A stretch of DNA of 64,000 nucleotides from NCBI RefSeq assembly GCF_001194135.2, contig NC_068997.1, positions 40,248,131-40,312,130 of the forward strand, in the 5' to 3' direction. This document shows positions 62 through 60,919 of this stretch, in pieces; the first letter of the stretch is position 1; every line of letters starts with the position of its first letter. The notes under the pieces are model-generated. The model was not told where the DNA came from, did no database searches, and was given only the letters and a program-made list of their open reading frames with translations. Position numbers and translations under genes: made by a program. This DNA is from Octopus bimaculoides (taxonomy: Eukaryota).

Positions 62-1560
62 GACAGCGAGCTGTACAGAAATTGCTTAGAGCTTGGGTCA
101 CCTTCCATCCTAACCCCATCGCCACCCCATCATAATCAGTGCTGAAGTACTAGGCACTCTATACTAGTAGACCGAATGCGTTCGATGCTTTCAACCTCAC
201 TTACACACATTTGCCATTGGATACCCAATACACTGTGGAAAGGCTGTAAGTGAAATCGCACAAACTTTCCATATATCTCCGGCATGTAGCAACGAAAACA
301 AAACAGAAATATTGTAGACACCCGACTTTGTCTTAAGTCAAATTCCATGTCGAGGCTATAAATATCTCTCCAATTTTTCAAATGCCCATCTCTAGCTTTC
401 TTGATTCGGAGCGAGATTTTACCTTGAAGAGTATTTGACATGTTCACAACACTGTCTAAACGCACGAAATTATCCACAACACGCAATTTATGTTCATACA
501 CATCAATTTTGGGCTCAGAGTAGACGTTACTTAGTGCTGATTGGTACATGAGGACTGTCATTTTTTAGACTCAATGCACATTATGTTGTCGAGAAGGAGT
601 CCATAAGATGCTGTATGTCATTGAGCAACAAGATAATGGTCATTAACATGCAAGAATTCACGTATAAGTAATGGAAACAGATTTGTTGTGGAAGCAAACC
701 GTCTTATATTCAGCATGTAATGCTGAACCAATGTAAACAACTATCGAAAGCCTTAGCAAAGTACAATACGAATAAGGTTGGCCCTCCTATATCCCCTTGC
801 TTAACACCATTTTCTCTTGATATTTGATCGGTGAGCTTACCACGTTGTCACATGTATTTATTCCACAATGAAAACTTCCAAGCATAGAGGAAAACTTATC
901 AAGACACTCGAGCTTCTTCAGAATGTTCCATAAGACATTGCTATTGTATCAAAACTTACATAATGAACGACTTGATACAAGTCCATCTTCTCAAATTTAT
1001 TGCAATTGTCTGGCAGAAAGGATCATATGCTTGTCGCCATGCCATTTGCGAAACCACAGTGAGACTAAGAGAACCTCATCAACGATGTTTTTAAGTACTC
1101 TACTATACTTCCCTAAACAACACCTTGCCAACAAAGAGAAGCGATGCTCCATTGTAATTACCAGTCTTCCTACCCACCTTCCCGTTTATAGAGAACCAAA
1201 ATCAGCGCATCTTTCCAATCATTTAGGATACTCTCTTTAATCCAAACCTTTTGCATTAATTCTGTTTGAGATGGAAGCACACTCTTGCTTCCATTATACA
1301 GCTCAGACATCCCAGACTACTTACTATTATCTAGGTTTTGGTTTTTACAGAATTTGGGACCGCTTCAAGCGGAGGAGTTTCTGCTTATATATTTTTTAGT
1401 GATCATGAAAGAAATCGAGCCAATAGACTCATCAGTCTGAGAAAGCTTATTTAAAAGTTCGTTGGTTTGAATATCTTTAGGTTCTCTGACTACACAGAGA
1501 AGTAATATCAGAGAGTGATTGTTTTCGCTTTGTTGAACGTAGTTAATTTTAGTTTCCAAC
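62..1560 (-). mobile_element. Decayed RTE-clade LINE, reverse transcriptase and C-terminal region
   Basis: Manual minus-strand translation gives ordered RTE RT motifs with stops and frameshifts: KVWIKESILNDWKDA, CGFR, SFDT, GVKQGD..PTLF, DIQHLMDSFS, then the 136-561 ORF (EPKIDV..HKLRVVDNF..EISLRI-like, RFH..VLGIQWQ..TSIE). Confidence 0.85.
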
Positions 1561-3590: not shown

Positions 3591-3826
3591 GAAAAATCGC
3601 AGCCTCATAATAGTAATAATGATAATAACAACGACGCGTTGAAGTTCCCTACCCTGAAAACTTCCATAACATTACCAAAACAAAACTCAAAATTAACAAT
3701 AAAAGGTAAGAAAGCAATTACATAGGAATCCAGCATGCACAACTGACCCCTATTTTATGTATAGCAAAAGATTTAATTCACAAGGCATATTGTTAAATAA
3801 TTTGCAATAGTATAAAAGATCAGTTT

Positions 3827-4043
3827 AAGGCGGTGAGCTGGTAGAATCATTAACACGCCTGGCAAAATTCTTAACGGCATTTCGTCCGTCTTCACTTGAG
3901 TTCAAATTCTGCCGAAATCCACTTTGGCTTTTATGCTTTCGGGGTCGATAAAATAGGTACCAGTTGAACACTGGGATCGATGTAATTGACTTACCCCCTC
4001 CCCCAAAATTGTTTGCCTTGAGCCAAAATCTGAAATCAATATT
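3827..4043 (+). mobile_element. tRNA-derived SINE, family A, near full length
   Basis: Head AAGGCGGTGAGCTGGTAGAATC, B-box GAGTTCAAATTC, body CTTTCGGGGTCGATAAAATAGGTACCAG; recurs more than 20 times in the window. Confidence 0.85.
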
Positions 4044-4579
4044 ATAAGCGATCAGTGTTTGGGAGCCAAAGCTGGAGCGAGCCTTTGACTGCACTTAAAA
4101 CAGAACGACTCCACCCAATAAGTACAACTAATACCCAACACACAAGTACTATACATGTGAGTATTATAAAAATAATGTTTTAGTTAAACCACAAACAGTT
4201 ATTGTACAAGTAGACACTTGGGACAAATGAGTTGAGAAAAATGGTAACGAATTTTTGTATCCAAACGAAACAGACCAAATTAAGCGATCATTTAGACAAA
4301 AAAACCACATTCTTTTCTAAAATCAAATCATGTCTACATGATTCAATCAACAACAATAAACTATTTACTAAGCACTGTTTATGATACTAATATCGTTGCA
4401 TCTGTAACTTAAGGAGGCCGTTACACTAAGGAAAGAAAGTGTTGGTGGCCACTAGCAACAGTAACGTTGATGATAATAGAGGTAAAGGAAAAGAGAGGGG
4501 AGAAAGTTAATTACGATTGGCAGAGTTACCACCGCACCATTAATTACTACGACATTATATATTCTCCATAAACATACTC

Positions 4580-4737
4580 GGCGCAGGCATGGCTATATGG
4601 TAAGTAGCATGCTTACCAACCTCATAGTTCCGTGGCATCTTGGGCGAATATCTTCTACTATAGCCTAGGGCTGACCGAAGTCTTGTGAGTAGATTTGGTA
4701 GATGGAAACTGAAAGACGCCCGTCGTATATATATGTG

Positions 4738-4832
<95 letters not shown>

Positions 4833-5018
4833 ATTTATTCACCTCAACATTGCTAGACAACCGATGCTGGTGTGTTTACGTCCTCGTAACTTAGCGGTTC
4901 GACACAAGACATCCGATGGAATAAGTACTAGGCTTACAAAAATAAGTCGTGGGGTCGATTTGCTCGACTAAAGATCGTGCTCCAGCATGGCCGCAGTCAC
5001 ATAGCTGACACAAGTAAA
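4580..5018 (+). mobile_element. tRNA-derived SINE, family B (CORE-like motif, internal (TG)n)
   Basis: tRNA-like head, CTTGGGCGAA CORE-like motif, internal TG tract, tail CCAGCATGGCCGCAGTC..ACAAGTAAA shared with other copies. Confidence 0.85.
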
Positions 5019-5039
5019 TGAATATCCTGTTACTGTATC

Positions 5040-7910: not shown

Positions 7911-8061
7911 TACAGTCAGTGGTGTCTCAGCTATTACTCAAACACGAAATTCTTTCCTCACGTTAAATGCTGAGTTCCAATTAGAACCACACTACGGTAA
8001 CATTGAGTACTTCTTCTTATGTTACTCCAGCAGATCTTAAAAAATAATCATAGTCATTTAT

Positions 8062-8281
8062 AAGGCGGTCAGCTGGCAGAATCTTTAGCACACTGGATAA
8101 AATGCTTTACTGCATTTCGTCCGTCAATATGTTCTCTGTTCAAGTTTTGCCAAGGTCCACTTTGCCTCTCATCCTTTCGGGGTTAGTAAAATATGTACCA
8201 GTTGAACACTGGGGTCGATGTAATTGACTTACCTCCTCCCATCAAATTTCAGGCCATGCGCCTATTGTAGAAAGGATTATT
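8062..8281 (+). mobile_element. SINE family A
   Basis: Head AAGGCGGTCAGCTGGCAGAATC and family body. Confidence 0.8.
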
Positions 8282-8730
8282 ACGTCATACTGCGGAGTAA
8301 GAAATGCCAGATTTCATTGGTATTTTTTTTATACGCTCACTGTCAAACATTAATAAAAGTTCTTACGCAAAAAATAATTTTCTAAGGATGTGAAGTCTTT
8401 CAAGGCGGGAAAATTTTGAAGCCCTTGCATTTGAACCTTTCCAACCGTATCAGATGGTACGATAGGCTTCTGTTTTGTATATGAAATTGAACATAAGGCT
8501 CCGATAATGTTTTGTACAATTTCGTTTTTCTGCTGTAAAGTATCCTAGTTACTTTTACTTTCAATTCAGCTTACCCCGAGATCTTTTCTATTTGTTTGTT
8601 TACAATTTTTTTTTTGTCTCAGGGAATTGCGACGTCTATTATGAGACATTTTCCTTTGTTTATGACATGTATAAAGATAATTGCTCTCTTCAATTGCTCT
8701 GTCTGTCTGGATGTCAAAATCCTATAGAAT

Positions 8731-12006: not shown

Positions 12007-12037
<31 letters not shown>

Positions 12038-12039
12038 TT

Positions 12040-12426
12040 TTATTCTTTTATTTGTTTCAGTAAATTGACTGTGGCCATGATAGAGCACCACCTTTAGTCG
12101 AACAAATCGACCCCAGGACTTATTCTTTGTAAGCCTAGCACTTATTGTATCGGATGTTTTTTGCCGAGCCGCTAAGTTACGGGGATGTAAACATACTAAC
12201 ATCGGTTGTCAAGCGATAGTGGGGGACAAACACAGGCACACAAACACGCGCGCACACACACACACACGCACACACACACACAATGGACTCTTTTTAGTTT
12301 CTGTATAGAAAATCCGCGCACAAGGCTTTGGACCACCTGAGACTAGAGTAGGAGACCCAAGATGCATTCAATGTCACTGAACCCCGAACCATGTGTCTCG
12401 GAAGTAAATTTCTTTCCAGACAGCCC
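12040..12426 (-). mobile_element. SINE family B, near full length
   Basis: Tail, CA tract and degenerate head (CTGAACCCCGAACCATGTG) in order. Confidence 0.8.
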
Positions 12427-14668: not shown

Positions 14669-15559
14669 ATGAGTGTGTAAGTATGTACATGTGTGTGTAT
14701 ACGTATATATGNNNNNNNNNNNNNNNNNNNNNNNNNNNNNNNNNNNNNNNNNNNNNNNNNNNNNNNNNNNNNNNNNNNNNNNNNNNNNNNNNNNNNNNNN
14801 NNNNNNNNNNNNNNNNNNNNNNNNNNNNNNNNNNNNNNNNNNNNNNNNNNNNNNNNNNNNNNNNNNNNNNNNNNNNNNNNNNNNNNNNNNNNNNNNNNNN
14901 NNNNNNNNNNNNNNNNNNNNNNNNNNNNNNNNNNNNNNNNNNNNNNNNNNNNNNNNNNNNNNNNNNNNNNNNNNNNNNNNNNNNNNNNNNNNNNNNNNNN
15001 NNNNNNNNNNNNNNNNNNNNNNNNNNNNNNNNNNNNNNNNNNNNNNNNNNNNNNNNNNNNNNNNNNNNNNNNNNNNNNNNNNNNNNNNNNNNNNNNNNNN
15101 NNNNNNNNNNNNNNNNNNNNNNNNNNNNNNNNNNNNNNNNNNNNNNNNNNNNNNNNNNNNNNNNNNNNNNNNNNNNNNNNNNNNNNNNNNNNNNNNNNNN
15201 NNNNNNNNNNNNNNNNNNNNNNNNNNNNNNNNNNNNNNNNNNNNNNNNNNNNNNNNNNNNNNNNNNNNNNNNNNNNNNNNNNNNNNNNNNNNNNNNNNNN
15301 NNNNNNNNNNNNNNNNNNNNNNNNNNNNNNNNNNNNNNNNNNNNNNNNNNNNNNNNNNNNNNNNNNNNNNNNNNNNNNNNNNNNNNNNNNNNNNNNNNNN
15401 NNNNNNNNNGGCTGCTTGAACCCATTCTCTAGCAGTACCATTTAACTGTTTTAATACAAAGTTTTTATATCATTTTTTCCTTCTTTTTCCCCCCATTTTT
15501 CCTTTTAGTATCGTATGTGTAGTCTTTAAAAAAAATTTGAAACTTTATTCACACTTTAC

Positions 15560-16749
15560 CATTTTATATATGGCAACAAGTCATCGTAATCTGTAACTGG
15601 CGGTAGGCTGTGAATGTCTACCTCACTCCCATTGAGTCCACCTTGTTTCCAAACCATTCCTTTAATTTTTAGTATCTCTCTTTGTCTATTACTATGGCTT
15701 TTGTACTTTCTGGGTAATGTTCCATTGGTAATTTAACTCTTATCTCCGATTTAAATTTGGTGATTTTCCTTTCTATATCTGCTTTTTGTATATGTTATCA
15801 TATGCCATTTGTTTTTCCAAGTCTTTTGACTGTTCGTTCCTGCGGTGGAATTTGGTTGTCTTCGATTGTTTCCTTTTCTTTTTCCTTCGTTGTTGGTGCT
15901 GTTGGTGGTTCATGTAGTGAATAATGTGTATATTCTATTTCACCCTCCTTCTTTTTCTTTCTTGGACTCTTCGGGGATGAGTTCACTAGTTCTTTGGTCC
16001 GCCACTTCGGCATTCTGCTCCTGTTGGCTTCCCTCGTTTTTATTTTCTCTCTGAGGATACTTTATTCTAATTTTCGCCGCATTGATAGCAAATTGGTGGC
16101 CTTCCTTCTAACACCACTCTCAGCCTTATATCCCCCGGTGGTATTATTTCTACAGCGATTTCATTTAGATCTTGTTGTCCGACCTGGATGACTATTTTTA
16201 GTCCGTATTTCTTTGTCACCTTCAGAATTTTGGCGTCTTCCACAGTTTTGTGTATTACGGCTGCCACCAGCCACGCTTCTTTGATTTCTGGTGGTGCTCT
16301 ACCTATTCTAACTCTGGCGACCCTTTTGCCGCAGTACGTATGTAGGAGTACCCATCTTTCCGTCTTCAGCGTCACAGTGGAATGATTTATTGCCTCCTGT
16401 TCGTTGACAAATCTCACCTCCATTGTGCCGTATTTTCTGCCTCTTGTATAGAATGTTGTCAGGTGCATAATTTCCTTTAGCCATTCTTCAATTGCTTCTT
16501 CCGTAGCTATCTCTAATTTTTTGTGGTTGTCGATAGTGTTCTGTACACCACTGTTCTTTTCTTGGTACTTGTTTCCACCTCTTGTGGAGGGGTCAGCTTT
16601 AAACTGGATCCCTCCTTCTGAATCAGCTTGTAGTGTTCCTTCAGCTTCTTCTGTTCAATTTTTATTACTTGCACTTCTTGCGAATCTGTACCTTTTCCAG
16701 CTGCTGAAGCATAACTCCCGGCATGTACTGGGATTGGTTCACACTCCAT
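15560..16749 (-). pseudogene. Gag/ORF1-like protein, copy 1 (frameshifted; zinc knuckle damaged)
   Basis: MECEP.. start; TTFYTRGRKYGTMEVRF..LRVVLEGRPPICYQCGE; C-terminal VEVDIHSLPPV-like segment. Confidence 0.75.
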
Positions 16750-17267
16750 TTTTTTTTCTTTTTTCTGTTACTTCGCTCCAAAATGGGGAAGAAGACAAAC
16801 GCAAAATTTAACAGGTATGCAGGCAAAAACAGCAACGGTATTTAACAAATTCAACCAAACATTACTCACCCGCGCGGGAAGAACTTTCAACAAAGATGCA
16901 ACAAAGTATAGAATGACTTATGTCAACGGGAATCAAAAATGATTTAAAAACCAACAAAAGTACATCACTGACTGACACTGCTTTCCACTATTTATCAGTA
17001 GTGAAACAGCCCACTTATCTCTTGCGGATGTCCGCCACAACACCTTCCCGCTTTGAGATTTATTCCTTCTTCCACAATCATTATAATTTTTCCTTTCTTT
17101 TTCTTCTAAACAGAATTATTTTTCTCTTTTTATTTAGATTTTTTCTTGTTCCACACAGAATTGTAGATCTTTTGTTTCAAAATGCCGCAGGTAGTACCAG
17201 TCTACATTGTTTACCGGTAGCGCTATTAACATACAGTGACTTGACTTAAATCCTTCCAACGGGCTTA

Positions 17268-17510
17268 TATTATTTTTCACTGTGTATAGTTCAGTTCTGT
17301 GTTAGAGTTCCAGTTTTATCAGACATTTTTTTTTCAAAATCTTTTTTGTCATATATTTTTCACTGTGTGCATATTATTTTTCGCTGTGTGTAGTTCGGTT
17401 CTGTGTTAGAGTTCCAATTTTATCAGACATTTTTTCTTCAGAATCTTTTTTTCATATATTCTTCATAGTGTGTGTATTACTTTTCACTGTATGAAGTTCA
17501 GATCTTACAT
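17268..17510. repeat. Tandem repeat, period 103 bp, about 2.3 copies
   Basis: ATATTATTTTTC(A/G)CTGTGT..TAGTTC units start at 17268, 17371 and 17474. Confidence 0.85.
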
Positions 17511-17550
17511 TTAGATCTTTAACATTTTTCCACTGCGTGAACTGAGTCCT

Positions 17551-17650
17551 GTTGCCACGGATAGAACGACACCATAATACAGAGGGAGGTATCCTCGTTG
17601 CCACTGATATAATGACACCGTTATATAGTGGGAGGTATCCTCATTGCCAC
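17551..17650. repeat. Tandem repeat, period 46 bp, about 2.2 copies
   Basis: TTGCCAC at 17552, 17598 and 17644; GGGAGGTATCCTC twice. Confidence 0.8.
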
Positions 17651-17959
17651 GTACCGCATTATGACGACGTATTTCGTCGTCTGCGTGACTGGCCCGAATA
17701 GCGTATCTCGCTGACTGTATTTCTTTATTTGGTACATCGGCAATGATGCAGGTGGGGGGCGGCACAAGGACAGAGAGAACACAATAGTGCGGAAAAAACC
17801 CCATAAAACGAATGAATGAGAAATTAATAATAATTAATGAGGATGTAATGGCTGCTTGAACCCCACTCAAAAAGTTTTTGCATCATTTTTTCTCTTCTCT
17901 CTTTTTTTCCTCTTAGCATCGTATGTGTAGTCTATTTTAACAAAAGCTTACTCACACTT

Positions 17960-20017
17960 TACGAATTCACGTATGGCTTCAAATCTACCTAATCTACAAC
18001 AGGCCTAAAAAGTTCTCAACATGAAATATAGCAGCATACCAAAAACGTGAGCGGGCAAGACATTTAAAATCACCTAAAATGTACCTTAATCCCCTGAGAT
18101 TGCAGATAATATTTCTGAATCTCTTTGATTCTTTAAATGTGCTGGCCCCCTGATAATTAATCGATATTAATTAATATATTAATATATGAATAATTACCAG
18201 ATCTTATAATAATCTNNNNNNNNNNNNNNNNNNNNNNNNNNNNNNNNNNNNNNNNNNNNNNNNNNNNNNNNNNNNNNNNNNNNNNNNNNNNNNNNNNNNN
18301 NNNNNNNNNNNNNNNNNNNNNNNNNNNNNNNNNNNNNNNNNNNNNNNNNNNNNNNNNNNNNNNNNNNNNNNNNNNNNNNNNNNNNNNNNNNNNNNNNNNN
18401 NNNNNNNNNNNNNNNNNNNNNNNNNNNNNNNNNNNNNNNNNNNNNNNNNNNNNNNNNNNNNNNNNNNNNNNNNNNNNNNNNNNNNNNNNNNNNNNNNNNN
18501 NNNNNNNNNNNNNNNNNNNNNNNNNNNNNNNNNNNNNNNNNNNNNNNNNNNNNNNNNNNNNNNNNNNNNNNNNNNNNNNNNNNNNNNNNNNNNNNNNNNN
18601 NNNNNNNNNNNNNNNNNNNNNNNNNNNNNNNNNNNNNNNNNNNNNNNNNNNNNNNNNNNNNNNNNNNNNNNNNNNNNNNNNNNNNNCTAGCGCATTAATT
18701 GTCCACGTTAGTTGTCGACGTTATTTTTAAAATGTACCTTAATTCCCTGAGATTGCAGATAATATTTCTGAATCTCTTTGATTCTTTAAATGTGCTGGCC
18801 TCCTGATAATTAATCGATATTAATTAATATATTAATATATGAATAATTACCAGATCTTATAATAATCTACAACAGGCGGTAGGTCGTCGAGCTCCACCTC
18901 TACTCCCAATGGGTTCATCTTGGTTCCAAACCATTCTCTCAACCTTATATACCTCCCTTGGTCCATCACCATGCTTTCTGTGCCTTCTGTGCAACGCTCT
19001 GCTGGCAATTCCACTCCAATCACCGATTTGAACTTGGTAATCCTCTCCTCTACCGCCGTACATCTCGTATATATCACCATATACCACCTATTTTTCTCGG
19101 GCTCCTTAACTGTTCGTTTTTGCGGTGAACTTGGGCTGTCTGGGTAGGTTTCCTTTTTGTTTGTTTCCTTTTGTTATTGATGCTGGTGGAGATATGTACC
19201 GCATAAGTTCTGCAATGTCCATTTCACTATTTTTCTTTTTGGACTCTTCGGAGGTGACCTCACAAATTCCCTTCCTCTTCTCCTGTTCACCTCTGCAAAT
19301 GCTTCCTCCGCTTCCTCCGTGCATTTCTCACTTTCCAGGGCCGCCACTTTGGCATTCTGCTCCTTTTGGCCTTCCTCCCTCCTACTGTCTCTCCGGGGGG
19401 CACCTTACTCCCATGTGTACCTTCTCTCCGCACCTTAATCCCACGTGTACCTCCCTCCACCACCACTCTCAACCACACGTCCCCCTGTAGAATCACCTCT
19501 TCAGTGATTTCATTCAAATTTCTTTGTCCAACCTGAATGACCATTTCTAGGCCAAACCCCCACCAACCTACTTTCCTTGTCCCTGTCACCCATGAAATTT
19601 TGGTGTCCTCCTTAGTTTTATGTATTACGGCTGCCACCAGCCACGCTTCCTTGATTTCCGGAGGTACCCTGACTATTCTAAATCTGGCAACATCTTTGCC
19701 GCAGTAGGTTGGCAGGAGTACCCATTCTTACGTCCTGAGCGTCACAGTGGAGTGATTTATTGCCTCCTGTCCGTTGGCAAACCTCAACTCCACTGTCCTG
19801 TATTTTCTGCCTCTTGTGTAGAATGTTGTCAGGTTCTTTATCTCCTTAAGCCATTCTTCTATCGCTTTTATTGTGGCTATTTTTATTTCCTTGGTTGTTG
19901 TAGACAGTGTTCTGTTAACCACTGTTCGTTTCATTGTACTGGTTGTCCTTTCTTCTGGCGGGGTCAGCCTTAAACAGGATCCCTCCTTCTGAATCAGCCT
20001 GTTATACTCCTTCAGTT
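17960..20017 (-). pseudogene. Gag/ORF1-like protein, copy 2 (N-terminus in gap; interrupted by insertion)
   Basis: QKEGSCLRLTPP..TTFYTRGRKYRTVELRF..LRVVVEG..CGEKVHMGVRCP..ITKFKSVIGVELP..VELDDLPPVV. Confidence 0.75.
18005..18862. mobile_element. Insertion into gag copy 2 flanked by a 15-bp target-site duplication
   Basis: TAATCTACAACAGGC at 17990-18004 and 18863-18877; copy 1 shows the uninterrupted site; 141-bp near-identical segments 18075-18215 and 18728-18868 on either side of a gap. Confidence 0.65.
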
Positions 20018-20679
20018 NNNNNNNNNNNNNNNNNNNNNNNNNNNNNNNNNNNNNNNNNNNNNNNNNNNNNNNNNNNNNNNNNNNNNNNNNNNNNNNNNNN
20101 NNNNNNNNNNNNNNNNNNNNNNNNNNNNNNNNNNNNNNNNNNNNNNNNNNNNNNNNNNNNNNNNNNNNNNNNNNNNNNNNNNNNNNNNNNNNNNNNNNNN
20201 NNNNNNNNNNNNNNNNNNNNNNNNNNNNNNNNNNNNNNNNNNNNNNNNNNNNNNNNNNNNNNNNNNNNNNNNNNNCAACAATTTGAATCATAGGTTCACC
20301 CTCAGGCGACTCTTCGACATGTATGTAACAAAGCACAGTACGACTTACGTCAACCGGAATCAAAAATGATTTAATACTAACAAATATACCTCGCGGGGTG
20401 CTTTTCTTTATTTGGCAGCCAGGCTATGAACACACTGGGGGACAAGACAAGGACAGACAATACACCACAGTGGGGACAAAAACATAAGTCGAATGAAAAA
20501 TGAAAAATGAAAAATGTACAATGAAATCGATGGTGATGAAATGGCCGCATGCGCCCCACTCACATGCAATACCATTTGAACGTTCTTACTTTCAGTTTGT
20601 AATCATTTCTTTTTTTCTTTGTTTTTTCACAATTAGCATCATTTTGTTTACTCTTTTTTCCCTTAAAAAATAAACAATT

Positions 20680-22083
20680 TTACTCTCTACTGGCGGCAGT
20701 TCGTCAAACTCCACCATGAATCCCGGCTGCTTAATTTGACACATTTCCTTCAACTTGTTATATTTTCTTTATCGATTAAAATAGCTTTGACATTTTCACC
20801 GTACACCTCCTTGGGCAACTTAACCCTTATAACGGATTTAAGCTTGGTTATCATTTTTTGCGTATTTATGCTTTTAGCATATGTCACGAAATTCCAGCTT
20901 GTTTTCTCGGCCTTCTTGTTTGTCATATTCCACTCTTGGCGCCACCGCCTCCATTCTTGTTAGTATTGCTGTTTCTTCTCATTGTGGTCCTAAAAAAATC
21001 TCTAGTGTGCTTGCTTCTATCTCCTCCTCCTCCTCCATAACCTCCTTCTCATCCTCCTTTTCTACCTCTTTCTCGACCTTCTTTTCAATACCCTTTACTG
21101 CTTTCTTTTCAACCTCCTTTACGACTTCCTTCCCCCACCCCTTTATCTGCAGCTCTTTTCTTTTTCTGTCTCTCCGGCGGAGAGTCCACTCTTTCTTTCC
21201 TCTTACGTTTTTTAACCGCTTCAAATTCCTCCTCTATTCCTGTTGTCTCCTTCTCATCTACCTGCACCACATCGTTCACCTTCTCCTGCTCTTCAGACTG
21301 TTTCATCTGTTGTTTCTTCTCTTCTCTTTGGGGGCATCTCGCTTTCATGTGGCCTTTCTCACCACACAGGTATCATATAGGAGGCCTACCCTCCACTACC
21401 ACTCACAATCTCATATTTTCGGGTAGGATAATTTCTTCCGGAATTTTATTCATGTCACTCACACTTGCATGTACTGCCATCTCGATTCCGTATCCCCAGC
21501 AGTTTATTCTTTTCGTTCTTGTTACTTTCAGGATTTTCGCATCCTCCTCCATATTGTACATGACTGCGGCAACCAAAAATGTTTCATTCAACTCTGGTGG
21601 CACTTTTCCCACCCTCACTCTGACAACTCCCTTGCCACAGTATGTTGGTAGGAGCACCCACTCTTCTGTCTTTATGCCATCAGTGGAGTGCTTTATCGCT
21701 TTGTCTACGCTTGCGAACCGCACCTCCACTGTGCCATATCTTCTTCCTCTTGTTATAAACGTGGTGACCTTTTTGACCTCTTTTAAACTCTTCTCAATGT
21801 CTTCTATCGTAGATATTTCGATTTTCCTTGTCGATATCTCCAGTGCTTTGTATATCACTGTCCCGTTCTTAACTCCATTTGTTAAGTCAACCGGGGGCGT
21901 CAATTTAAGGCTGTGGCCTTCCTTTTCCAATAGCTTGCCGCATTCTCTCAGCTTTTTTGGCTCAATTTTAACTTCTCGAACTTCCAAAGCTTCTACTCCT
22001 GTTCCTCTGGCAGCTGTAGCCGCATTACTGTGGCTCTTTGCTGGTTCGGTCTCCATTACAATTTTTCTCTCCGCCTCTCTCAT
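20680..22083 (-). pseudogene. Gag/ORF1-like protein, copy 3 (best preserved; two in-frame TGA and later frameshifts)
   Basis: 226-aa ORF continues in frame as L*VVVEGRPPI*YLCGEKGHMKARCP (CX2CX4HX4C with the first Cys mutated to TGA), a K/E-rich tail, then ITKLKSVIRVKLP..VEFDELPPV. Confidence 0.8.
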
Positions 22084-24737
22084 AAATGGGAAGAAAAAAC
22101 ACAGTTCAACAAAAGCTCGTTAGCAGAAACTGTAATTTCAACAAGGAACAAAACGTGATACACCAACGAGGAGAGACCTTTAACAATTATAACAATATCA
22201 CCACTTACTTCAACGTAACCAAGAAAAACACACTGCCACAGTTTATTCCCACTCTCTTATTTCTATGCCACCGCATAGAAGGAAGAGAGTGGGACACACA
22301 GAAATGGGGACAAAAAGAACTTCGTCGACACATGCGGCAGTAGGATGATCTTATTGAAAGTTAGTGACGCAAGAGAGGAAAGATGGATTGAGGCTCTTGC
22401 CAAGAAGCTTTGACAAGAGACTCACATGCCCGGCACGGTCGAGATCTTTTGTCGAAATCGAGATCCACATAATTACTTTTACCACATTCCTTCAAGGAAA
22501 GAGTTCATTAATGAGCGAGAGAAGGGGTTTATTAGAAGCCAATTTATATATGACTCTATCATCACCTGGTGTAATTCATCTATGTCGTAAAACCTTTGAA
22601 GTTAAAAAAGACATATCAGATGTCCTTTCGACATTTAGATTAGCCAAGCTTGATGCTGGGTCACTATGAGACTATTTCATTGGGATCAGTGTGTGTGTGC
22701 TACTACAGTTTACAGTGTCCTGCTGTCTTATGAACTTTTGTCAGACAAATTCTCGAATAATAAACAATTGACCAATAACTTCACGTGAAAATATGAATAA
22801 TAGATGAAAACGTTCTTTGAAATGATGTCTTAAAGAAAATAACTATGTCGGCTATCAGATTGAATGTCTAAAATTCAGCGGCGCGGGAAAAGCAATAAAA
22901 AATGAACGACATAAAAATGAATATTTGATGGAAAGTTTCATGTCTCACTGAAAAGTGAAATTCTTAAAGTATTTATGAAGAATAATATAGTAGATATAAA
23001 TCTATCGTTACTATCGTCATTATGAATTTATTATCCCATTTTTACGTTGTAGACGGTAAGTGGTAAAAGCTGCAGATCAGAGAGAGCTTGGCGGCAGTAA
23101 TAATATATTTAATAGAAAATTAAGATATTTGAATAAAAAATATAATAGAAATGTTTTTGACATAACGTAAAAATCTTTCTCAGAATATTTTAAAAGTTAT
23201 ATTTGAAAACAGGATGAGTAAAAAGTGATGCACAAAAATAATGGATAGTAAATAACTCATTGGTAGTAAAGAAAAAGGAAAACAAATGAAAGATGTGTAG
23301 AAAAAAAATCTCAGTACTAGAGTAAATTCATGTCGTGTTTGATATAATGTTTTGGTTGCAAAAGATGTGAACTACCTAAAAAAAAATTTTACTTAATCGA
23401 GTGAAAACTAAGGCATAAATTATTTTTTCCATATTTTTCAAGATATATATCAAAGATATTAAAATATTTAATAGAGAAATATGGATAAAAGTTGGAAATG
23501 TTTACTGAAAAATGGAGTGTTTTGGCCCAGAGGGACTAAAAATTTGAAAGTATTTTAGAGAACAGCATGCCAGTCACACAATCTCATCCCTTGTGTTAGG
23601 TGTAGCAGACTGGCTAATTAAAAAAAAACGGTATGTCGTATCAACTATTTCAGTACAAAGCAAAATTTTTAGCAAATAAGGATGATACAGTAAGTGCAGA
23701 TCAGAGAAAACTATTTCATCGGATGTTATCAATACAATATTCTTTCACCTATAATTCTTTTTCGAAACTGACTTCATGCTTTATTCTACCAAGGTTAATA
23801 ACATCAGTACAAACGACTATCATTAGTTGTGTTCGACTAAAGTGGGCAAACTGCATATGTACTACACGTGTACACACCAGTTCTTTGCAGTTTTCAAATA
23901 GCCTTTCTACAACAAGATTTCAGAATCTCCTGGCATTTTGCCTTTAAAAATTCACATTCTGAAAAATAAATACATAAATAAAATAAAAGTTTTAAGAAGA
24001 GAATTATCACTTCCAAACTTTAGGAAGCTGTAATAACAGGAAAATATGTTCATTTCCAGACTCCACTGCCTTTTTCTTATACCATATAATTATTTAGTCA
24101 AAAAGACGAAAATGTATCTTTTCAGTGTATTCGTTTTCTCTTACAAAATACTTGAAGTGAAATAGTGTTAAGAATTTCACATCAGGTACCTTGAAAAACA
24201 AATACAAAAGTGAAACATTTTAAGCTGCAGCCAAACAAGAAACAGTCTATAGTTTTAATTTTCCTTATTTCACTGCAAACATTAAATTTACATTGCAACC
24301 CAGCAATTACTTCGCTTGCTCTCAAAATCTGCATCCTCAAACTAAAACTCAAGACCTTCACAACCGTTTCTAAACTTTTGCCCTATCATGATCTGAATTG
24401 TCGAAAAACTTGTCATGTTTTTCTCATATGAAGAGGAGTTTGAAACTAATGTGGTCACATTTAAGAACTTAGCAAATCTCGTTTTCTCCTAACACATTTG
24501 TTGTTGGTATGATTTTACTTTTCCTTAAACAATCTACCGTTAGCAAAACCTCAATGTTATAGATAGCTTGATAATCAACACTGCTCGCTCCTTATTCACC
24601 TCAGTTTAATTAAATATATATCTTTAATATCTTTGGTTAAAATGAAGATGTTTACACCTCGGTCTGTGTTCAATTTTACTTCAAGCAGGTTTTCTTAACA
24701 GGCAGTTTGGTAATGAGAGCTAAATGTGGGGTTCTTT

Positions 24738-24965
24738 TTTTTTCACTTGTTTCAGTCATTAAACTGCGGCCATGCTGGGGCACCACCTTGAAGAACTTTT
24801 AGTCGAATGAATCGACCCCAGTACTTATTTTTTAAAAGCTTGGTACTTATTCTACTGGCCTCTATTGCCGAACAGCTGCGTTCCTGGGACGTAAGCACAC
24901 CAATACCGGTTGTCAAGTGATAGTGGGGGGGAGAAACACACACACGCACCCAGACACACACACGC

Positions 24966-25062
<97 letters not shown>

Positions 25063-25244
25063 GAAAGAGAGAGAGAGACGACGGGCTTCTTTCAGTTTCT
25101 GTCTGCCAAATCCACTCACATGGCTTTAGTTGGCTCGAGGCTATAGCAGACACACTTGCCCAAGATGCCAGGCAATGAGACTAAACCCAGAACCATGTGG
25201 TTGGGAAGCAAGCTTCTTGCCACACAGCCACACATGCGTCTATA
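24738..25244 (-). mobile_element. SINE family B, full length
   Basis: Complete tail, CA tract, ACTTGCCCAAG CORE-like motif and head. Confidence 0.9.
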
Positions 25245-25551
25245 AAAAAAACCGACTTGCAAAAGCCGGGAAATGAACTCGGGACTCTCAGAACCACCGA
25301 CTATTATGAATAATACTCAAATTTTTTTCAAACTCACTTGATATACACAGCAACAATGGGCAAGCATCAGAGGTAGGCAGATGGAGATTTAACATCCATA
25401 AATGGATTATTCTTCAGAGATTAGTATATTTAAGCGGCTAGACCAGTGCTCTAAAGAAATGTTCCTTTAAACCTTAAAGGAACTTTTATTTAAGGCATGA
25501 AGGAGAATATTAGAATCACAAAAACTTTATATAACCACACTACTTTATAAT

Positions 25552-25945
25552 AGTTTCAATTTTTGGCACAAGGCCAGAAATTTTTGGAGTTGATGCAAAC
25601 GACCCTAGGGCCAACTGGAACTTATTTTATTGAATCCGAAACGATAAAAGGTAAAGTTGACCCCGTCAGCATTTGAACTCAGAATGTAAAAACAGACGAA
25701 ATGCTGCTTAGCATTTTGAAAGGCGTGCTAACGATTCTACCTGTTCACTGCCTTCATAGTAATAATAAAACTAGTTTCAAATCTTGGTACAAGGCCAGCA
25801 ATTTCGGTAAGAAGGTCAGTCGATTACATCGACTCCATTGTTCAACTAACACTTATTTCATCTACCCCCGAAAGGATGAGAGGCAAGGTGGACTTCGACG
25901 GAATTCGAAGTCAGAACGTAAAGACGGACGAAATGTTAGGATTCA
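25552..25945 (-). mobile_element. Two adjacent SINE family A copies
   Basis: Family body at about 25552-25750 and 25768-25945. Confidence 0.75.
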
Positions 25946-37271: not shown

Positions 37272-37570
37272 CAGACGAAATGCCGCTAAGCATTCTGTCT
37301 GGCGTGCTAACGACCAGCTCGCCGCTTAACAACAATAAAAATATTCTTTTCTACTCTAGCCACAAGGCTCGAAATTTTTGGGAAGAGAGCCAGTCGATTA
37401 GATCGACCCCAGTATGCAACTAGTACTTAATTTATCGACCCTGAAAGGATGAAAGGCAAAGTCACCCTCGGTGGAATTTGAATTCAAAGCATACAGACAG
37501 ACGAAATGCCGCTAAGCATTCTGTCCAGCGTCCTAACGGTTCTTCCAGCTCGCCGCTAAACAACAATAGA
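37272..37570 (-). mobile_element. SINE family A plus a duplicated head and flank
   Basis: 37272-37337 repeats 37498-37569, including the flank AACAACAATA. Confidence 0.75.
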
Positions 37571-38069
37571 TATATTAACACAGAAATCATAGTAAAAATT
37601 AAAAACTAAATCTTAGCCAACAAGAAGATTTCTACGTGCTCGCTCACTCTGCGAGATATAGCANNNNNNNNNNNNNNNNNNNNNNNNNNNNNNNNNNNNN
37701 NNNNNNNNNNNNNNNNNNNNNNNNNNNNNNNNNNNNNNNNNNNNNNNNNNNNNNNNNNNNNNNNNNNNNNNNNNNNNNNNNNNNNNNNNNNNNNNNNNNN
37801 NNNNNNNNNNNNNNNNNNNNNNNNNNNNNNNNNNNNNNNNNNNNNNNNNNNNNNNNNNNNNNNNNNNNNNNNNNNNNNNNNNNNNNNNNNNNNNNNNNNN
37901 NNNNNNNNNNNNNNNNNNNNNNNNNNNNNNNNNNNNNNNNNNNNNNNNNNNNNNNNNNNNNNNNNNNNNNNNNNNNNNNNNNNNNNNNNNNNNNNNNNNN
38001 NNNNNNNNNNNNNNNNNNNNNNNNNNNNNNNNNNNNNNNNNNNNNNNNNNNNNNNNNNNNNNNNNNNNN

Positions 38070-40943: not shown

Positions 40944-41588
40944 CAACTTGTTTTAAATCTCTGAATGAGAGACATACAGTAACAGTACCAAACAGAAATG
41001 TTTATATGCCAACAGAATGTAGCAGTCCTATAAAGGTCGATGTTACTGTTGTTATAGACCCAAGAAAACATCTTTTCCAGCTGGCTATCGACACACAGTT
41101 TGTGTCCGTATAGCATTCACAAGGGAGGTCATCGCTCCCATCTCTAGATTTACGTGATAGTCACAGACCCAAATTTCTAGGTGATTATCTGTCCTCATTG
41201 GGAGATAATCCACATTCTATTGGCATATAAACTTTACTATTCGGTACCGTTACTGTATATCTCTCACTGAGAAATTTAAAACAAGTTGCTTTTCTCCATA
41301 CGAGATCAGCGACTGTGCGTCGCTTAAAGAATATATAGCATTTGCGAGTGGAGAAAGCTTTTGTCACTAGCCTGTGATTATCTCACAATGAGGACAGGTA
41401 TCCACCTAGAAATCCGGGTCATTGAGTATGACGTAAGGCTAGAGATGGGAATGATGACCTCTCTTGCGAATGCTATACGGACACATACTGTGTGTCGATA
41501 GGCAGCTGGAAAAAATGTTTTCCTGGGGCTATAGCAACAGTAACATCGTCCTTTATAAGACTGTCACATTCTGTTGGCATATAAACAT
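40944..41588. mobile_element. MITE-like element with 77-bp TIRs plus an adjacent inverted partial copy
   Basis: IR 40944-41020/41212-41288; second IR 40998-41211/41375-41588. Confidence 0.7.
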
Positions 41589-50358: not shown

Positions 50359-50765
50359 ACAGGCGTGGCTGTGTGGAAAGAAACTTCCTTCAAAACTACA
50401 TGGTTCCGGGTTCAGTTCCACAGCATGTCACCATGGGTAAGTGTATTCTACAATAGCCTCGGACCAACCAAAGCCTTGTGAGTAGATTTGGTAGATGCGT
50501 GTGTGTGAGTGTGTGAGTGTGTGTGTGTGCCCCCGCGAGTACGTGTGTCTTTGGGTCGCTGATTGTACGCCCACAACCGCTTGACAACCGGTGCTGATGT
50601 GTTTACGTCCGTGCAACATAGAGATTCGACAAAAGATACCGATGCAATAAGTAGCAGGCTTTAAGAAAATATACAAAGTACTGGGATCGATTCATTCGAC
50701 TAAGAAATTCCCGAAGCCGAAGCTCCAGAATGACCACAGTTTAATGACTGAAACAAGAAAGAAGT
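50359..50765 (+). mobile_element. SINE family B, full length
   Basis: Head AGGCGTGGCTGTGTGG, B-box GGTTCAGTTCC, tail GACTGAAACAAG. Confidence 0.85.
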
Positions 50766-51029
50766 TAAAAAATAAATTAGATTTCACTGGGGAAAAACAG
50801 CGATTTAGTTTCAATTCTCAGCCTTTGTTAACGGTATAAACATCATATTTTAATTTTTATACTTCAACAAAATATAGTTTTGAATCTTGTCAACAGAAGC
50901 TTATTTTATGAGAATTTCATCAAAATAAGTTCTTCGATATTTTTAAACCCAAAGGAATTCTGCACCATTTTGGTTTATTAAATACCAAATTAAATCTCCA
51001 ATAAGGTGTGTGTGTGTGGTGATGGCGCA

Positions 51030-51575
51030 TGGTTTCGGTCACGGAAGTTCCCCTCCGAGGTACAAGTCCAGGCAAGATTGTTCGTGGGAGACCAGCAATC
51101 GCCCATGCATACCAGCCTATTCTTTACACGTCACTGATGCTATCCAAGGGAAAGGCAAGCGCCGATAATGCTTGGCACCAATGACGTCGCAAATCATTTC
51201 TACAGCTGAATTAACTGTAGCAGCATGAAATAGAGTTTCTTGCTTAAGAACATAGCACACAGCCCGGAACATCAGGCTCACAATCAAGAAGTAGTGAGAT
51301 CGTTTCCCGGACCAGGATACGTGTTGTGTTCTTGAGTAAGACACTTTATTTCACGTTGCTCTAGTTCACTCAGCTGTAGAAATAAATCGCGACGTCACTG
51401 GTGTCAAGCTGTATCGGCCCCGTTGCCTTTCCCTTGGGAAACATCAGTAGCATGGAGAGGGGAGGTTGGTATGCATGGGCGACTGCTGGTCTTCCATAAA
51501 CAACTTTGCCCGGACTTGTGCCTCGGTGGGGAACTTTCTAGATGCAACCCCATGGTCATTCATGACCGAAGTGGG
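51030..51575. mobile_element. Head-to-head inverted pair of SINE family E copies
   Basis: Arms about 51045-51268 and 51306-51536 are mutual reverse complements (TGTGTTCTT.AG.AAG, CAGCTGTAGAAAT, TTGCCTTTCCCTTGG, TGGTATGCATGGGCGA). Confidence 0.8.
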
Positions 51576-54775: not shown

Positions 54776-56135
54776 AACAAATCAGTTATTAACTACACAG
54801 CCATAACACAAATAATAAAGTAGTAATTGACCATACACACCAACAAAGTTGCATCACTGCCAAGAACACATTAAACAATAACATACCATCACGCACATAA
54901 TTTATCCAGATAGCACAACATACATACAACATCTTAAACTATAAATAAATCAGATTTCAGAGGAATTATCAATAAAAGACTATACAAAAACTGCTAGTAA
55001 ACAGCCACAGCCAGCTGAGGGAAAAAAACACCTGTCTCTTCATAAGAATAAAGTAAGGGATCCTTTCTCACTCTCTTCTCTCTCGTCAATTATGGCTGCA
55101 CTTAGAATAGACAGTACGAATGCATGTAACCCGGGAAAACCCTTCGAATTTAGATGTGATGACCGGCAGCAACACCAGTTTCCGATTCACAAACCTTCCC
55201 GCCCATTTTCGGTGGATACGAAATTTACTTATATCCAAGTCAAATGGAAGAGGAGGGTGCGATATCCTCAAAAACTGGCTCAGACATTTCCCACTGCTTG
55301 ACAGGCTGCGACTGGATTTCCTGAATGAATCAATGGACAAACCGTATCGTTCCATCCAGGCCTTATCTGGATAGAATATTCTGTAGGAAGGTAAATATAA
55401 ATCTTTGGCTACAAAAACACCAATAATATGTTGTGAGCAGTTAACCTAAATTAGCTTCGTAGTTAGGGAACCGGTAATTGAAGCTAAACGCTTAGCCCCG
55501 GCACGCCTGGCTTACAGAGACTAGATTAGAGGATTAGTTAACCGGACGTTGACATGGACAATTGTCAGTAACAGATGGTAGACCACTCTGTAAAGAGAGA
55601 TTAGCATAGAATCGGTAAGTTCGTGGCGATAGAGAAATATAGAATAGGCGGGAAGGGCAGGCAATTTTCCTTTGTCTCGGAGCTATAGTGAAAGATTTTG
55701 TGTGTTGGATGAGTCTGAAAGGGCTAAAGAAAGACACTTTCCTTTTCAGCTAAGCCTTCATCGGTGTTTACAAGTTCCTATTGGGAAGGAAGGTAGGAGT
55801 GAAGAGTAAAGTGCTGTTCCTCAGCAAATTTCTTGAAAGATGGGTAAATGCTGCAAAGATGGTCCGAGTGAATGGACGTACTCTAAGCATGTGCTTGCTG
55901 GTTAAAAACTACTGACGAGGGAGAGAGAGGGAAGCACTTGCTACAATACTCAAGTGATCTCGGCGAATCTGTGGGGTTCCTTGTCTCCTTTCGATGGTGT
56001 TTCCTCATATTAGGGAATTTTGTTGTTAACATTTTCCTAACCTTTTATTGTTTACACATGTTTATGTAGATTCCCATTGCCCCGTGTCTTTGTATTATCC
56101 GTAATGTTTTTCGCTGCCCATGTGACCGATGAAAA

Positions 56136-60566: not shown

Positions 60567-60699
60567 TTGAAGAGTCTGCGGTTTGTATATTCCCACTGTT
60601 TCCCAGATCATAATCAAAACTTTAAGGTTGTCTGCTCTTGCTTATTTTAATGTGGATTCACTATTAAGCTAAAGGTTCTTTCCTCTTACTGTAGCTGTA

Positions 60700-60919
60700 A
60701 TACTGGTTTCAAATCTTGGCACATGGCCAGCATTTTCGGGGCAGGGGCTAAGTCGATTACATCGACTCCAGTACTCAACTGTCACTTATTTTATCAACTC
60801 TAAAAGGATGAAACGCAAAGTCGACCTCGGTGGAATTTGAACTCAAAACGTGAAGACGGACGAAATACAGCTAAACCTTTTAGTCGGCATGCTAACGATT
60901 CTCCCAGGTCGTCGCCTTA
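60700..60919 (-). mobile_element. SINE family A, full length
   Basis: Ends GTCGTCGCCTT (head); family body intact. Confidence 0.85.

What the first reader, a model, noticed from the sequence alone, without database searches (positions are those of the whole stretch)
15410..22340. Head-to-tail array of three diverged gag/ORF1-only elements with no reverse transcriptase
Seen: three minus-strand copies of a roughly 400-460 aa ORF (RRM-like segments, VVEGRPP.CX2CX4HX4C knuckle, K/E-rich tail, conserved C-terminal LPPV block). Each ends about 130-150 bp before a shared terminal segment, with no room for or motif of an ORF2. By eye, copies 1 and 2 share about three quarters of residues and copy 3 about half, with mainly conservative changes, so they diverged under selection rather than by local duplication. 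Known: ORF1-only HAL1 elements, gag-only HeT-A head-to-tail arrays and target-specific Tx1-clade LINEs exist; the knuckle context most resembles L1/Tx1 ORF1p. Inference: a non-autonomous gag-only retroelement family whose different lineages insert repeatedly at one site, perhaps into their own ends.
Basis: partly seen in the sequence, partly recalled or inferred. Interest (0 to 1): 0.85.

Follow-up and report, generated by a model that had tools for sequence, protein, structure and literature searches.

The report
Decayed ORF1-only LINE concatemer in octopus
The region holds three dead copies, lined up head to tail, of an octopus jumping gene that has kept only the RNA-binding "gag" gene of an L1/Tx1-type LINE and lost its reverse transcriptase; the family repeatedly forms such end-to-end chains, which is unusual but fits known LINE biology.

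Summary
Window 15410-22340 (minus strand) carries three copies of a ~455-aa ORF1/gag: two RRM-like domains, one CCHC knuckle, a K/E-rich linker and a C-terminal "LPPV" domain. All three are broken by stops and frameshifts, and none has an ORF2. The window is octopus DNA.

The protein is the ORF1p of an octopod L1/Tx1-type LINE clade. Full-length relatives with an intact APE-RT-zf-RVT ORF2 exist in O. vulgaris, O. sinensis and Argonauta hians. The window copies belong to an ORF1-only branch with a 5'UTR, ORF1, an A-rich linker and a conserved ~190-bp tail ending AATAAAGAAA, without poly(A).

The copies diverged under purifying selection: dN/dS is 0.31 for copies 1/2, and synonymous sites are saturated against copy 3. 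They are separate lineages, not local duplicates.

Head-to-tail chains recur at 4 of 10 loci sampled, including one that mixes ORF1-only units with an ORF2-bearing LINE and one of three full-length LINEs. Single copies have 11-27-bp target-site duplications at unrelated sites, whereas junctions inside arrays have none. I therefore favour concatemers made by reverse-transcriptase template switching over repeated self-targeted insertion; this step is inferred.

Verdict: a new variant of a known kind (HAL1-like), of moderate interest.

The parts
20402..22232 (-). Copy 3: a complete, fully sequenced ORF1-only unit (5'UTR ~22084-22232, ORF1 remnant 20595-22083, 3'UTR and tail 20402-20594)
   Evidence: There is no N inside the unit. 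The 5' limit is approximate (+/-20 bp).
21406..22083 (-). Copy 3 N-terminal ORF (226 aa, intact), predicted to fold as two RRM-like domains
   Evidence: AlphaFold2 with a 44-sequence alignment gave pLDDT 88.4. The best Foldseek PDB matches are tandem-RRM proteins (La, IMP3 RRM12, NONO, Prp24), with probability ~1 and TM ~0.3.
21328..21402 (-). Copy 3 'VVVEGRPPI*YLCGEKGHMKARCP' CCHC zinc knuckle. A stop at 21373-21375 stands where the first Cys should be, and another stop lies just upstream at 21403-21405.
   Evidence: Pfam zf-CCHC scores E 0.0034, below the cutoff; relatives reach 22-24 bits.
20595..20896 (-). Copy 3 C-terminal domain remnant (WNFVTY...ELPPV), split over two frames with one stop
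20402..20590 (-). Copy 3 conserved 3' tail ending ...TGCCAAATAAAGAAAAG. It abuts the 5' start of copy 2 directly, with no poly(A) and no TSD.
17720..20395 (-). Copy 2: 5'UTR 20276-20395, gap 20018-20275, ORF1 remnant 19090-20015, C-terminal domain 18863-19086, foreign insertion 18005-18862, end of ORF and 3'UTR 17720-18004
18005..18862 (.). Foreign insertion in copy 2 just before its stop codon, bounded by the 15-bp direct repeat GCCTGTTGTAGATTA (17990-18004 and 18863-18877). It contains gap 18216-18686, whose flanks are 141-bp near-identical repeats.
17720..17880 (-). Copy 2 conserved 3' tail ending ...TACCAAATAAAGAAATA
16967..17719 (.). ~750-bp spacer between copy 2 and copy 1. It is unrelated to the family and contains 46-bp x2.3 and 104-bp x2.3 tandem repeats. 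Origin unknown.
15410..16966 (-). Copy 1: 5'UTR ~16750-16966, ORF1 remnant 15559-16749 (longest open stretch 16070-16654), stop 15556-15558, and the start of the 3'UTR running into gap 14712-15409

Best explanation
Shown:
- The three copies are dead members of an ORF1-only (gag-only) branch of an octopod L1/Tx1-type LINE clade.
- A unit is ~1.8 kb: a ~150-bp 5'UTR, an ORF1p of ~455 aa, an A-rich linker, and a conserved ~190-bp pyrimidine-rich tail ending AATAAAGAAA with no poly(A).
- ORF1p consists of two RRM-like domains, one CCHC knuckle, a K/E-rich linker and a small C-terminal domain.
- There is no ORF2.
- The ORF1 evolved under purifying selection.

Inferred:
- The elements make their own RNA-binding/chaperone protein but borrow the endonuclease-reverse transcriptase (ORF2p) of related autonomous LINEs. 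Those LINEs share the same kind of 3' end (motifs CATTCG, TGTCTGTCC, GTCCCCTCT, AATAAAGAAA).
- Integration is by target-primed reverse transcription. This is shown by the TSDs of single copies.

Favoured but unproven:
- The head-to-tail chains arise in one integration event. After copying one RNA to its 5' end, the RT jumps to the 3' tail of another family RNA. This stitches together whichever lineages are present (ORF1-only units of different subfamilies, or the LINE itself), with precise junctions that lack a TSD.
- After insertion the window array decayed neutrally and was hit by one later insertion.
For: Homologues and taxon:
- All named homologues are octopod proteins. The profile search found 562 hits, 157 of them at E<1e-10.

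Full-length relatives:
- L006 (O. vulgaris) has an intact ORF1 of 503 aa and an intact ORF2 of 1132 aa. Pfam gives Exo_endo_phos 2e-15, RVT_1 8e-31 and zf-RVT 5e-9. The ORF2 matches human L1 ORF2p at E 2e-71, against 1e-24 for R2.
- L007 (O. sinensis) and L008 (Argonauta) also carry ORF1 plus ORF2.

ORF1-only anatomy confirmed on gap-free sequence:
- Window copy 3, L004 and L005.

Selection:
- Copies 1 vs 2: pN 0.145, pS 0.38, omega 0.31.
- Copy 3 vs copies 1 and 2: pN 0.22-0.27, with pS 0.80-0.83, which is saturated.

Phylogeny:
- In the NJ tree the ORF1-only copies cluster apart from ORF2-linked ORF1s, and array neighbours are not each other's closest relatives.

3' tail:
- Strongly conserved among ORF1-only lineages (z 15-50).
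- Conserved at motif level with LINE tails (z 3.7-5).
- The LINE unit D in L003 ends with the same motif and is followed by a family 5'UTR.

Integration:
- L008 has a perfect 16-bp TSD, L007 a 27-nt match in (ATT)n, and L005 an 11-bp TSD.
- Copies L001 and L004 are 5'-truncated.

Arrays:
- Found in the window, L003 (A-B-C-LINE D-E), L006 (three or more full-length units, period 5270 bp) and L009.
- Internal junctions run AATAAAGAAAAC directly into the next 5' end, with no TSD.
- The L006 junction nucleotides differ although the units are 99.4% identical.

Precedent:
- R2 proteins jump from a finished cDNA to another 3'UTR RNA and give head-to-tail repeats (PMC11371274).
Against: - No array could be checked for a single TSD around the whole chain. 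The ends lie in assembly gaps or are undefined.
- In the window only one of the two junctions is a direct abutment. 750 bp of unexplained DNA separates copies 2 and 1.
- In L003 the last unit E is only a 5'UTR fragment, which the jump model does not predict.
- Tail similarity between ORF1-only units and sampled ORF2-bearing LINEs is weak, and no conserved RNA fold was found. The actual autonomous partner is therefore not identified.
- L003 A/B (dS 0.15) and the L006 units could also have grown by unequal crossing-over.
- The Tx1-versus-L1 placement rests on domain architecture, not on an RT phylogeny.
Confidence: 0.6

Rival explanations
1. Serial self-targeted insertion. Each unit inserted separately, with the endonuclease or priming step preferring the end of a resident copy. 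This is the first reader's idea, and it resembles target-specific Tx1-group LINEs or HeT-A.
For: - Arrays contain different lineages.
- Tx1-group LINEs are known for target specificity (established knowledge; PMC4640811 covers target-specific LINEs in general).
- The 5' flanks of several first units contain ATAAA-like motifs.
Against: - Single copies sit at unrelated targets with 11-27-bp TSDs.
- The flanks of L002 and L003A are not similar.
- Internal junctions show no TSD and no duplicated tail or flank.
- ATAAA-like motifs are expected by chance in 62% AT DNA.
Confidence: 0.2
2. Local tandem duplication or unequal crossing-over of one inserted element (or of a host gene), followed by divergence in place.
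For: - L006 units are 99.4% identical.
- L003 A and B are each other's close relatives (dS 0.15).
- Window copies 1 and 2 are each other's closest relatives in the small sample.
Against: - Window copy 3 versus copies 1/2, and L003 C versus A/B, have saturated synonymous sites with pN of only 0.22-0.38. They therefore diverged as functional genes, yet all are now pseudogenes.
- Copy 3 is closer to copies on other chromosomes than to copy 2.
- The L006 junctions differ at several of ~25 nt while the units differ at 0.6%.
- Dispersed copies are 5'-truncated and flanked by TSDs, which shows transposition.
Confidence: 0.12
3. A host (domesticated) ZCCHC3-like gene family arranged in tandem, not a transposon.
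For: - Several intact ORFs are annotated as genes in O. bimaculoides, O. sinensis and O. vulgaris.
- The ORF is under purifying selection.
- Vertebrate ZCCHC3 has the same architecture of two RNA-binding domains plus a CCHC knuckle (Pfam RBD_ZCCHC3 families in fish LINE ORF1).
Against: - There are hundreds of diverged, mostly broken copies.
- Copies have TSDs, 5' truncation and conserved element termini.
- Close relatives are linked to an ORF2.
- All three window copies are pseudogenes.
- Some gene models are obvious chimaeras with unrelated domains.
Confidence: 0.05

Closest known systems
HAL1 (half-L1) elements of mammals
   Same: - A non-autonomous L1 derivative that keeps the 5'UTR, ORF1 and 3' end but lacks ORF2.
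- ORF1 is kept under purifying selection.
- It is presumed to be mobilised in trans by L1 ORF2p.
   Different: - HAL1 has the type II ORF1p (coiled coil, RRM, CTD; Pfam Transposase_22) and a poly(A) tail, is dispersed, and is mammalian.
- Here ORF1p is type I (RRMs plus CCHC), there is no poly(A) but a conserved tail, the elements chain head to tail, and the host is an octopus.
- The ORF1-only branch here looks old and diversified; amino-acid identity falls to 25-30% between its lineages.
L1/Tx1-group LINEs (Tx1L of Xenopus; 'L1-Tx1' families annotated in Octopus vulgaris, PMC13282606)
   Same: - Full-length relatives have an APE endonuclease, RT and a C-terminal zf-RVT ORF2, best matching L1 ORF2p.
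- ORF1p has RRM-like domains and a CCHC knuckle, the type I architecture that is typical of Tx1 (PMC5203782).
   Different: - The window copies have no ORF2.
- No conserved target site was seen, whereas many Tx1-group lineages are target-specific.
- Placement within Tx1 by RT phylogeny was not done.
HeT-A of Drosophila telomeres
   Same: Gag-only, non-autonomous, found in head-to-tail arrays mixed with RT-bearing relatives (TART/TAHRE), with gag under selection.
   Different: - HeT-A belongs to the Jockey clade, has a different gag and joins through oligo(A).
- It sits only at chromosome ends and has a host (telomere) role.
- The octopus arrays in L003, L006 and L009 lie tens of Mb inside chromosomes, and their junctions have no A-tract.
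R2 and other non-LTR RT template jumping (in vitro concatemers; U6/L1 chimaeras; partial tandems of Penelope-like elements)
   Same: The RT continues from the 5' end of one RNA onto the 3' end of another. This gives head-to-tail junctions without a TSD (PMC11371274).
   Different: For R2 this is mostly an in vitro or engineered-cell observation. Here it would be a frequent natural outcome that joins different subfamilies. It has not been demonstrated for this clade.

Membership tests
L1 superfamily / Tx1-group LINE clade (for the family the ORF belongs to) | ORF2 with an N-terminal APE-type endonuclease, an RT and a C-terminal Cys/His (zf-RVT) domain | tested here: met
   L006 ORF2 scores Exo_endo_phos 2e-15, RVT_1 8e-31 and zf-RVT 5e-9. 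It matches human L1 ORF2p at E 2e-71. This holds for relatives, not for the window copies.
L1 superfamily / Tx1-group LINE clade (for the family the ORF belongs to) | Type I ORF1p: RRM domain(s) plus a CCHC knuckle | tested here: met
   The AF2 model has pLDDT 88.4 and Foldseek matches tandem-RRM proteins. The CX2CX4HX4C motif is present; Pfam zf-CCHC scores 18-24 bits in relatives.
L1 superfamily / Tx1-group LINE clade (for the family the ORF belongs to) | RT-domain phylogeny grouping with reference Tx1 elements | not tested
   No reference Tx1 sequences were available. The nearest named relatives are unnamed fish LINEs with a ZCCHC3-type ORF1.
L1 superfamily / Tx1-group LINE clade (for the family the ORF belongs to) | Sequence-specific target site (a feature of many Tx1-group lineages) | tested here: not met
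   The TSDs and flanks of L005, L007, L008, L002 and L003A are unrelated.
ORF1-only non-autonomous LINE (HAL1-like) | Has ORF1 and element termini but no ORF2 | tested here: met
   Window copy 3, L004 and L005 are contiguous units of ~1.4-1.9 kb. No ORF2 hit was found in them.
ORF1-only non-autonomous LINE (HAL1-like) | ORF1 maintained by purifying selection | tested here: met
   omega is 0.1-0.47 in all measurable pairs, and synonymous sites are saturated between lineages.
ORF1-only non-autonomous LINE (HAL1-like) | Shares its 3' end with an autonomous partner that mobilises it | tested here: inconclusive
   Only motif-level similarity to LINE tails was found (z 3.7-5). One LINE (L003 D) lies in the same array with the same terminal motif. 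No partner with a closely matching tail was found.
ORF1-only non-autonomous LINE (HAL1-like) | Mammalian L1 type II ORF1p (HAL1 in the strict sense) | tested here: not met
   There is no Transposase_22 hit, and the architecture is different.
HeT-A-like telomeric gag-only retrotransposon | Head-to-tail arrays of gag-only units | tested here: met
   Window, L003 and L009.
HeT-A-like telomeric gag-only retrotransposon | Location at chromosome ends | tested here: not met
   L003 is at 51.5 of 94.6 Mb, L006 at 31.9 of 40.2 Mb and L009 at 28.1 of 58.2 Mb. The position of the window is unknown.
HeT-A-like telomeric gag-only retrotransposon | A promoter in the 3' end that drives the downstream unit | not testable with these tools
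   This needs transcript 5' ends or reporter assays.

The most novel reading that the evidence does not exclude
This octopod LINE clade habitually builds heterologous head-to-tail concatemers by serial RT template jumping onto a shared, poly(A)-less 3' tail. An old, diversified ORF1-only lineage propagates mainly by being picked up in such jumps, riding upstream of the LINE that supplied ORF2p. That would be a natural, frequent in vivo case of multi-template TPRT and a new mode of LINE parasitism. It might come with HeT-A-like 'promoting in tandem' from the tail.
Probability: 0.3. Interest if true: 0.7.

Novelty: new variant of a known kind. Interest (0 to 1): 0.5.

Why it matters
ORF1-only LINE derivatives are known mainly from mammals (HAL1) and from fly telomeres (HeT-A). 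An old, selected and diversified ORF1-only branch in a mollusc L1/Tx1 clade would show that keeping gag while borrowing RT is a recurrent, stable parasitic strategy.

The mixed head-to-tail chains matter for three reasons:
- They offer a natural system for studying RT template switching during target-primed reverse transcription.
- They bear on how LINEs seed tandem arrays and satellites.
- They explain several chimaeric or fused 'uncharacterized CCHC protein' gene models in octopus annotations.

Tried and rejected
- Pfam and PDB sequence searches of the gag found only the zinc knuckle.
- A single-sequence AlphaFold run failed, with pLDDT 30.
- Rfam found no hammerhead, HDV-like or other ribozyme, or any known RNA, at the junctions. 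I therefore dropped the Penelope/retrozyme-like and R2-like ribozyme ideas.
- LTR-like structure was rejected. First units and single copies have no tail copy upstream.
- RNAalifold on eight tails found no conserved fold.
- A conserved external target was rejected.
- The idea that the 750-bp spacer is a short non-coding family member was not supported.
- A tail relic upstream of copy 3 is only weakly suggested: 2 of 300 shuffles reached the score.
- Profile-profile comparison of the octopus N-terminal domains with a fish ZCCHC3-type LINE ORF1 matched only the knuckle.
- Homology of the C-terminal domain between ORF1-only units and LINE ORF1s is weak (hhalign probability 30%, E 5e-4).
- Looking up the window ORF by exact sequence found nothing, so the source species was not pinned down.
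- The third homologue search, using the profile, returned only 4 proteins.
- No array had both ends readable for a whole-array TSD test.
Full report
**Observation**

The window is AT-rich animal DNA with 13 N-gaps.

On the minus strand of 15410-22340 there are three copies of one coding sequence. Each copy has, in order:
- an N-terminal region with two 'TRGR.YGTVEVRF'-type segments;
- 'VVEGRPP' followed by a CX2CX4HX4C knuckle;
- a K/E-rich stretch;
- a C-terminal block 'W..VTY...KAIVIDKE.Y.KLKE.FG...P.GVEV.FDELPPV'.

None of the copies is intact.
- Copy 3 keeps a 226-aa open N-terminal part (21406-22083). It then has stops at 21403-21405, 21373-21375 and 21109-21111, plus at least three frameshifts.
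- Copy 2 has lost its start in gap 20018-20275. It has a stop at 19728-19730 and a frameshifted knuckle that lacks its first Cys.
- Copy 1 has several stops and frameshifts and a truncated knuckle.

**The gaps**

Gap 20018-20275 lies between the 5'UTR of copy 2 (20276-20395, homologous to copy 1 at 16896-16966) and its codon ~45. Copy 1 has about 199 bp in that interval. The two sides are therefore collinear, but the frame across the gap cannot be known.

Gap 18216-18686 is different. Its two flanks repeat the same 141 bp at 98.6%. The whole stretch 18005-18862 is bounded by a 15-bp direct repeat, GCCTGTTGTAGATTA, and interrupts copy 2 just after 'LPPVVDY'. The rest of the C-terminus and the 3'UTR resume at 18004. 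This is a later insertion into copy 2, and possibly also an assembly redundancy.

**Anatomy of a unit**

I compared the window with related loci from public octopus assemblies. A unit starts at a defined 5' end (alpha type GTTGAGCAGCAG...). It has a ~150-bp 5'UTR, the ORF, an A-rich linker, and a conserved pyrimidine-rich tail of ~190 bp ending ...GTCCCCCTCTGTG..GCCAAATAAAGAAA(A)C, with no poly(A).

Copy 3 is such a unit, 1.83 kb long and fully sequenced. Its tail (20402-20590) abuts the 5' start of copy 2. Copy 2's tail is at 17720-17880. Copy 1's 3'UTR runs into gap 14712-15409.

Copies 2 and 1 are not adjacent. 750 bp of unrelated DNA with two short tandem repeats lies between them.

No EN/RT similarity exists inside the region.

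**What the protein is**

Sequence searches against Pfam and PDB see only the knuckle.

With an alignment of 44 relatives, AlphaFold2 gives a confident model of the N-terminal 226 aa (pLDDT 88.4). Its best PDB matches are tandem-RRM proteins: La, IMP3 RRM12, NONO and Prp24.

Homologues named by their sources are all from octopods: Octopus bimaculoides, O. sinensis, O. vulgaris and Argonauta hians. A profile search of 1.84 billion representatives gives 562 hits, 157 of them below 1e-10.

More distant homologues (25-37% identity) are the ORF1 of full-length LINEs.
- L006 (O. vulgaris) has an intact 503-aa ORF1 overlapping an intact 1132-aa ORF2 with APE endonuclease, RT and zf-RVT domains. Its best PDB match is human L1 ORF2p at E 2e-71.
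- L007 (O. sinensis) and L008 (Argonauta) have the same layout.

RRM(s) plus CCHC is the type I ORF1p typical of Tx1-group and plant L1 elements (PMC5203782). 'L1-Tx1' families are annotated as recently active in O. vulgaris (PMC13282606). The nearest named ORF2 relatives are fish LINEs whose ORF1 carries Pfam RBD_ZCCHC3_1st/2nd plus zf-CCHC. No sequence-level link of the octopus RRM region to those models was found.

**ORF1-only status and selection**

Contiguous units without ORF2 are window copy 3, L004, L005 and L003 A-C.

In a neighbour-joining tree the ORF1-only copies form their own clades, apart from ORF2-linked ORF1s.

Nei-Gojobori estimates give:
- omega 0.31 for window copies 1/2 (pN 0.145, pS 0.38);
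- saturated synonymous sites (pS 0.80-0.83) with pN 0.22-0.27 for copy 3 against copies 1/2.

The copies therefore diverged as functional genes and died after insertion. They are not local duplicates decaying neutrally.

**How they move**

Single copies show hallmarks of target-primed reverse transcription.
- L008 has a perfect 16-bp TSD.
- L007 has a 27-nt match in an (ATT)n tract.
- L005 has an 11-bp TSD.
- L001 and L004 are 5'-truncated.

The targets are unrelated.

The tail is very well conserved among ORF1-only lineages (z 15-50). It is shared only at motif level with ORF2-bearing LINEs (z 3.7-5), and it has no detectable conserved fold. Mobilisation in trans through the tail is therefore an inference, and the partner is not identified.

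**Arrays**

Head-to-tail chains occur at 4 of 10 loci examined.
- The window.
- L003: ORF1-only A, B and C, then a LINE (D) with APE and zf-RVT, then a 5'UTR fragment E.
- L006: three or more full-length LINEs with a 5270-bp period and 99.4% identity.
- L009.

One gene model (P0003) also fuses two adjacent copies.

Internal junctions join AATAAAGAAAAC directly to the next 5' end, without a TSD or A-tract. In L006 the few junction nucleotides differ between junctions although the units are nearly identical.

Rfam finds no ribozyme, and there is no LTR-like terminal repeat.

These facts fit concatemer formation by RT template jumping onto another family RNA within one integration event. This behaviour is documented for R2 proteins (PMC11371274). 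They fit this better than serial self-targeted insertions or unequal crossing-over, although the latter may have expanded L006 and L003 A/B.

The decisive test is one TSD around a whole array. It could not be run because the array ends fall in gaps.

**Verdict**

Two points need correcting:
- RT-bearing relatives exist, and they share arrays with the ORF1-only units.
- The junction evidence favours concatemerisation over repeated insertion at one site.

This is a new variant of a known kind: HAL1-like in logic, HeT-A-like in arrangement, and L1/Tx1 in ancestry.

Noticed in passing
window 18005-18862: An 858-bp insertion (471 bp of it N) in copy 2, bounded by the 15-bp direct repeat GCCTGTTGTAGATTA. 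The two flanks of the internal gap repeat the same AT-rich 141 bp at 98.6%. This could be the terminal direct repeats of a small element or an assembly redundancy.
   Followed up: partly
window 16967-17719: A 750-bp spacer between copies 2 and 1 with 46-bp x2.3 and 104-bp x2.3 tandem repeats and an A-rich end. It is unrelated to the family, and its origin is unknown.
   Followed up: partly
window 22200-22340: Just upstream of copy 3 there is a 48-bp hairpin (22247-22294) and a weak match to the family tail (TTTTTGTCCCCA..CTGTGTGT; 2 of 300 shuffles reached the score). This may be a relic of a fourth unit.
   Followed up: partly
window 55649-55882 (+): A weak tblastn match (28% identity, E 9e-6) to the C-terminal end of the L006 LINE ORF2. 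It is probably an old LINE fragment unrelated to the array.
   Followed up: no
window 139-564 (-): A 142-aa open frame that looks by eye like the region downstream of an RT in some LINEs. It has no Pfam hit.
   Followed up: partly
window 3823-4047, 8061-8283, 25545-25935, 37334-37578, 60697-60938, 61209-61443 and others: Many copies of a ~170-220-bp SINE-like repeat. A second ~400-bp repeat (4580-5024, 12030-12425, 24732-25244, 50365-50777) is often next to (TG)n/(CA)n microsatellites. The same repeats occur in the O. sinensis and O. bimaculoides loci.
   Followed up: no
window 40998-41588 and 51045-51536: Two ~500-600-bp stretches that match their own reverse complement at 76-77%. They are large imperfect palindromes and may be foldback-type elements.
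   Followed up: no
L006 4440-19184 (O. vulgaris OX597840.1, ~31.87 Mb): A tandem array of at least three full-length LINEs. The first unit has intact, overlapping ORF1 (503 aa) and ORF2 (1132 aa), so it is potentially active.
   Followed up: partly
proteins P0006, P0008, P0029, P0095 (octopus gene models): These gene models fuse pieces of this ORF1 to unrelated domains: ISXO2-like transposase, RGS, WD40 and (by eye) LDL-receptor class A repeats. They are likely annotation chimaeras or exonised element fragments.
   Followed up: no
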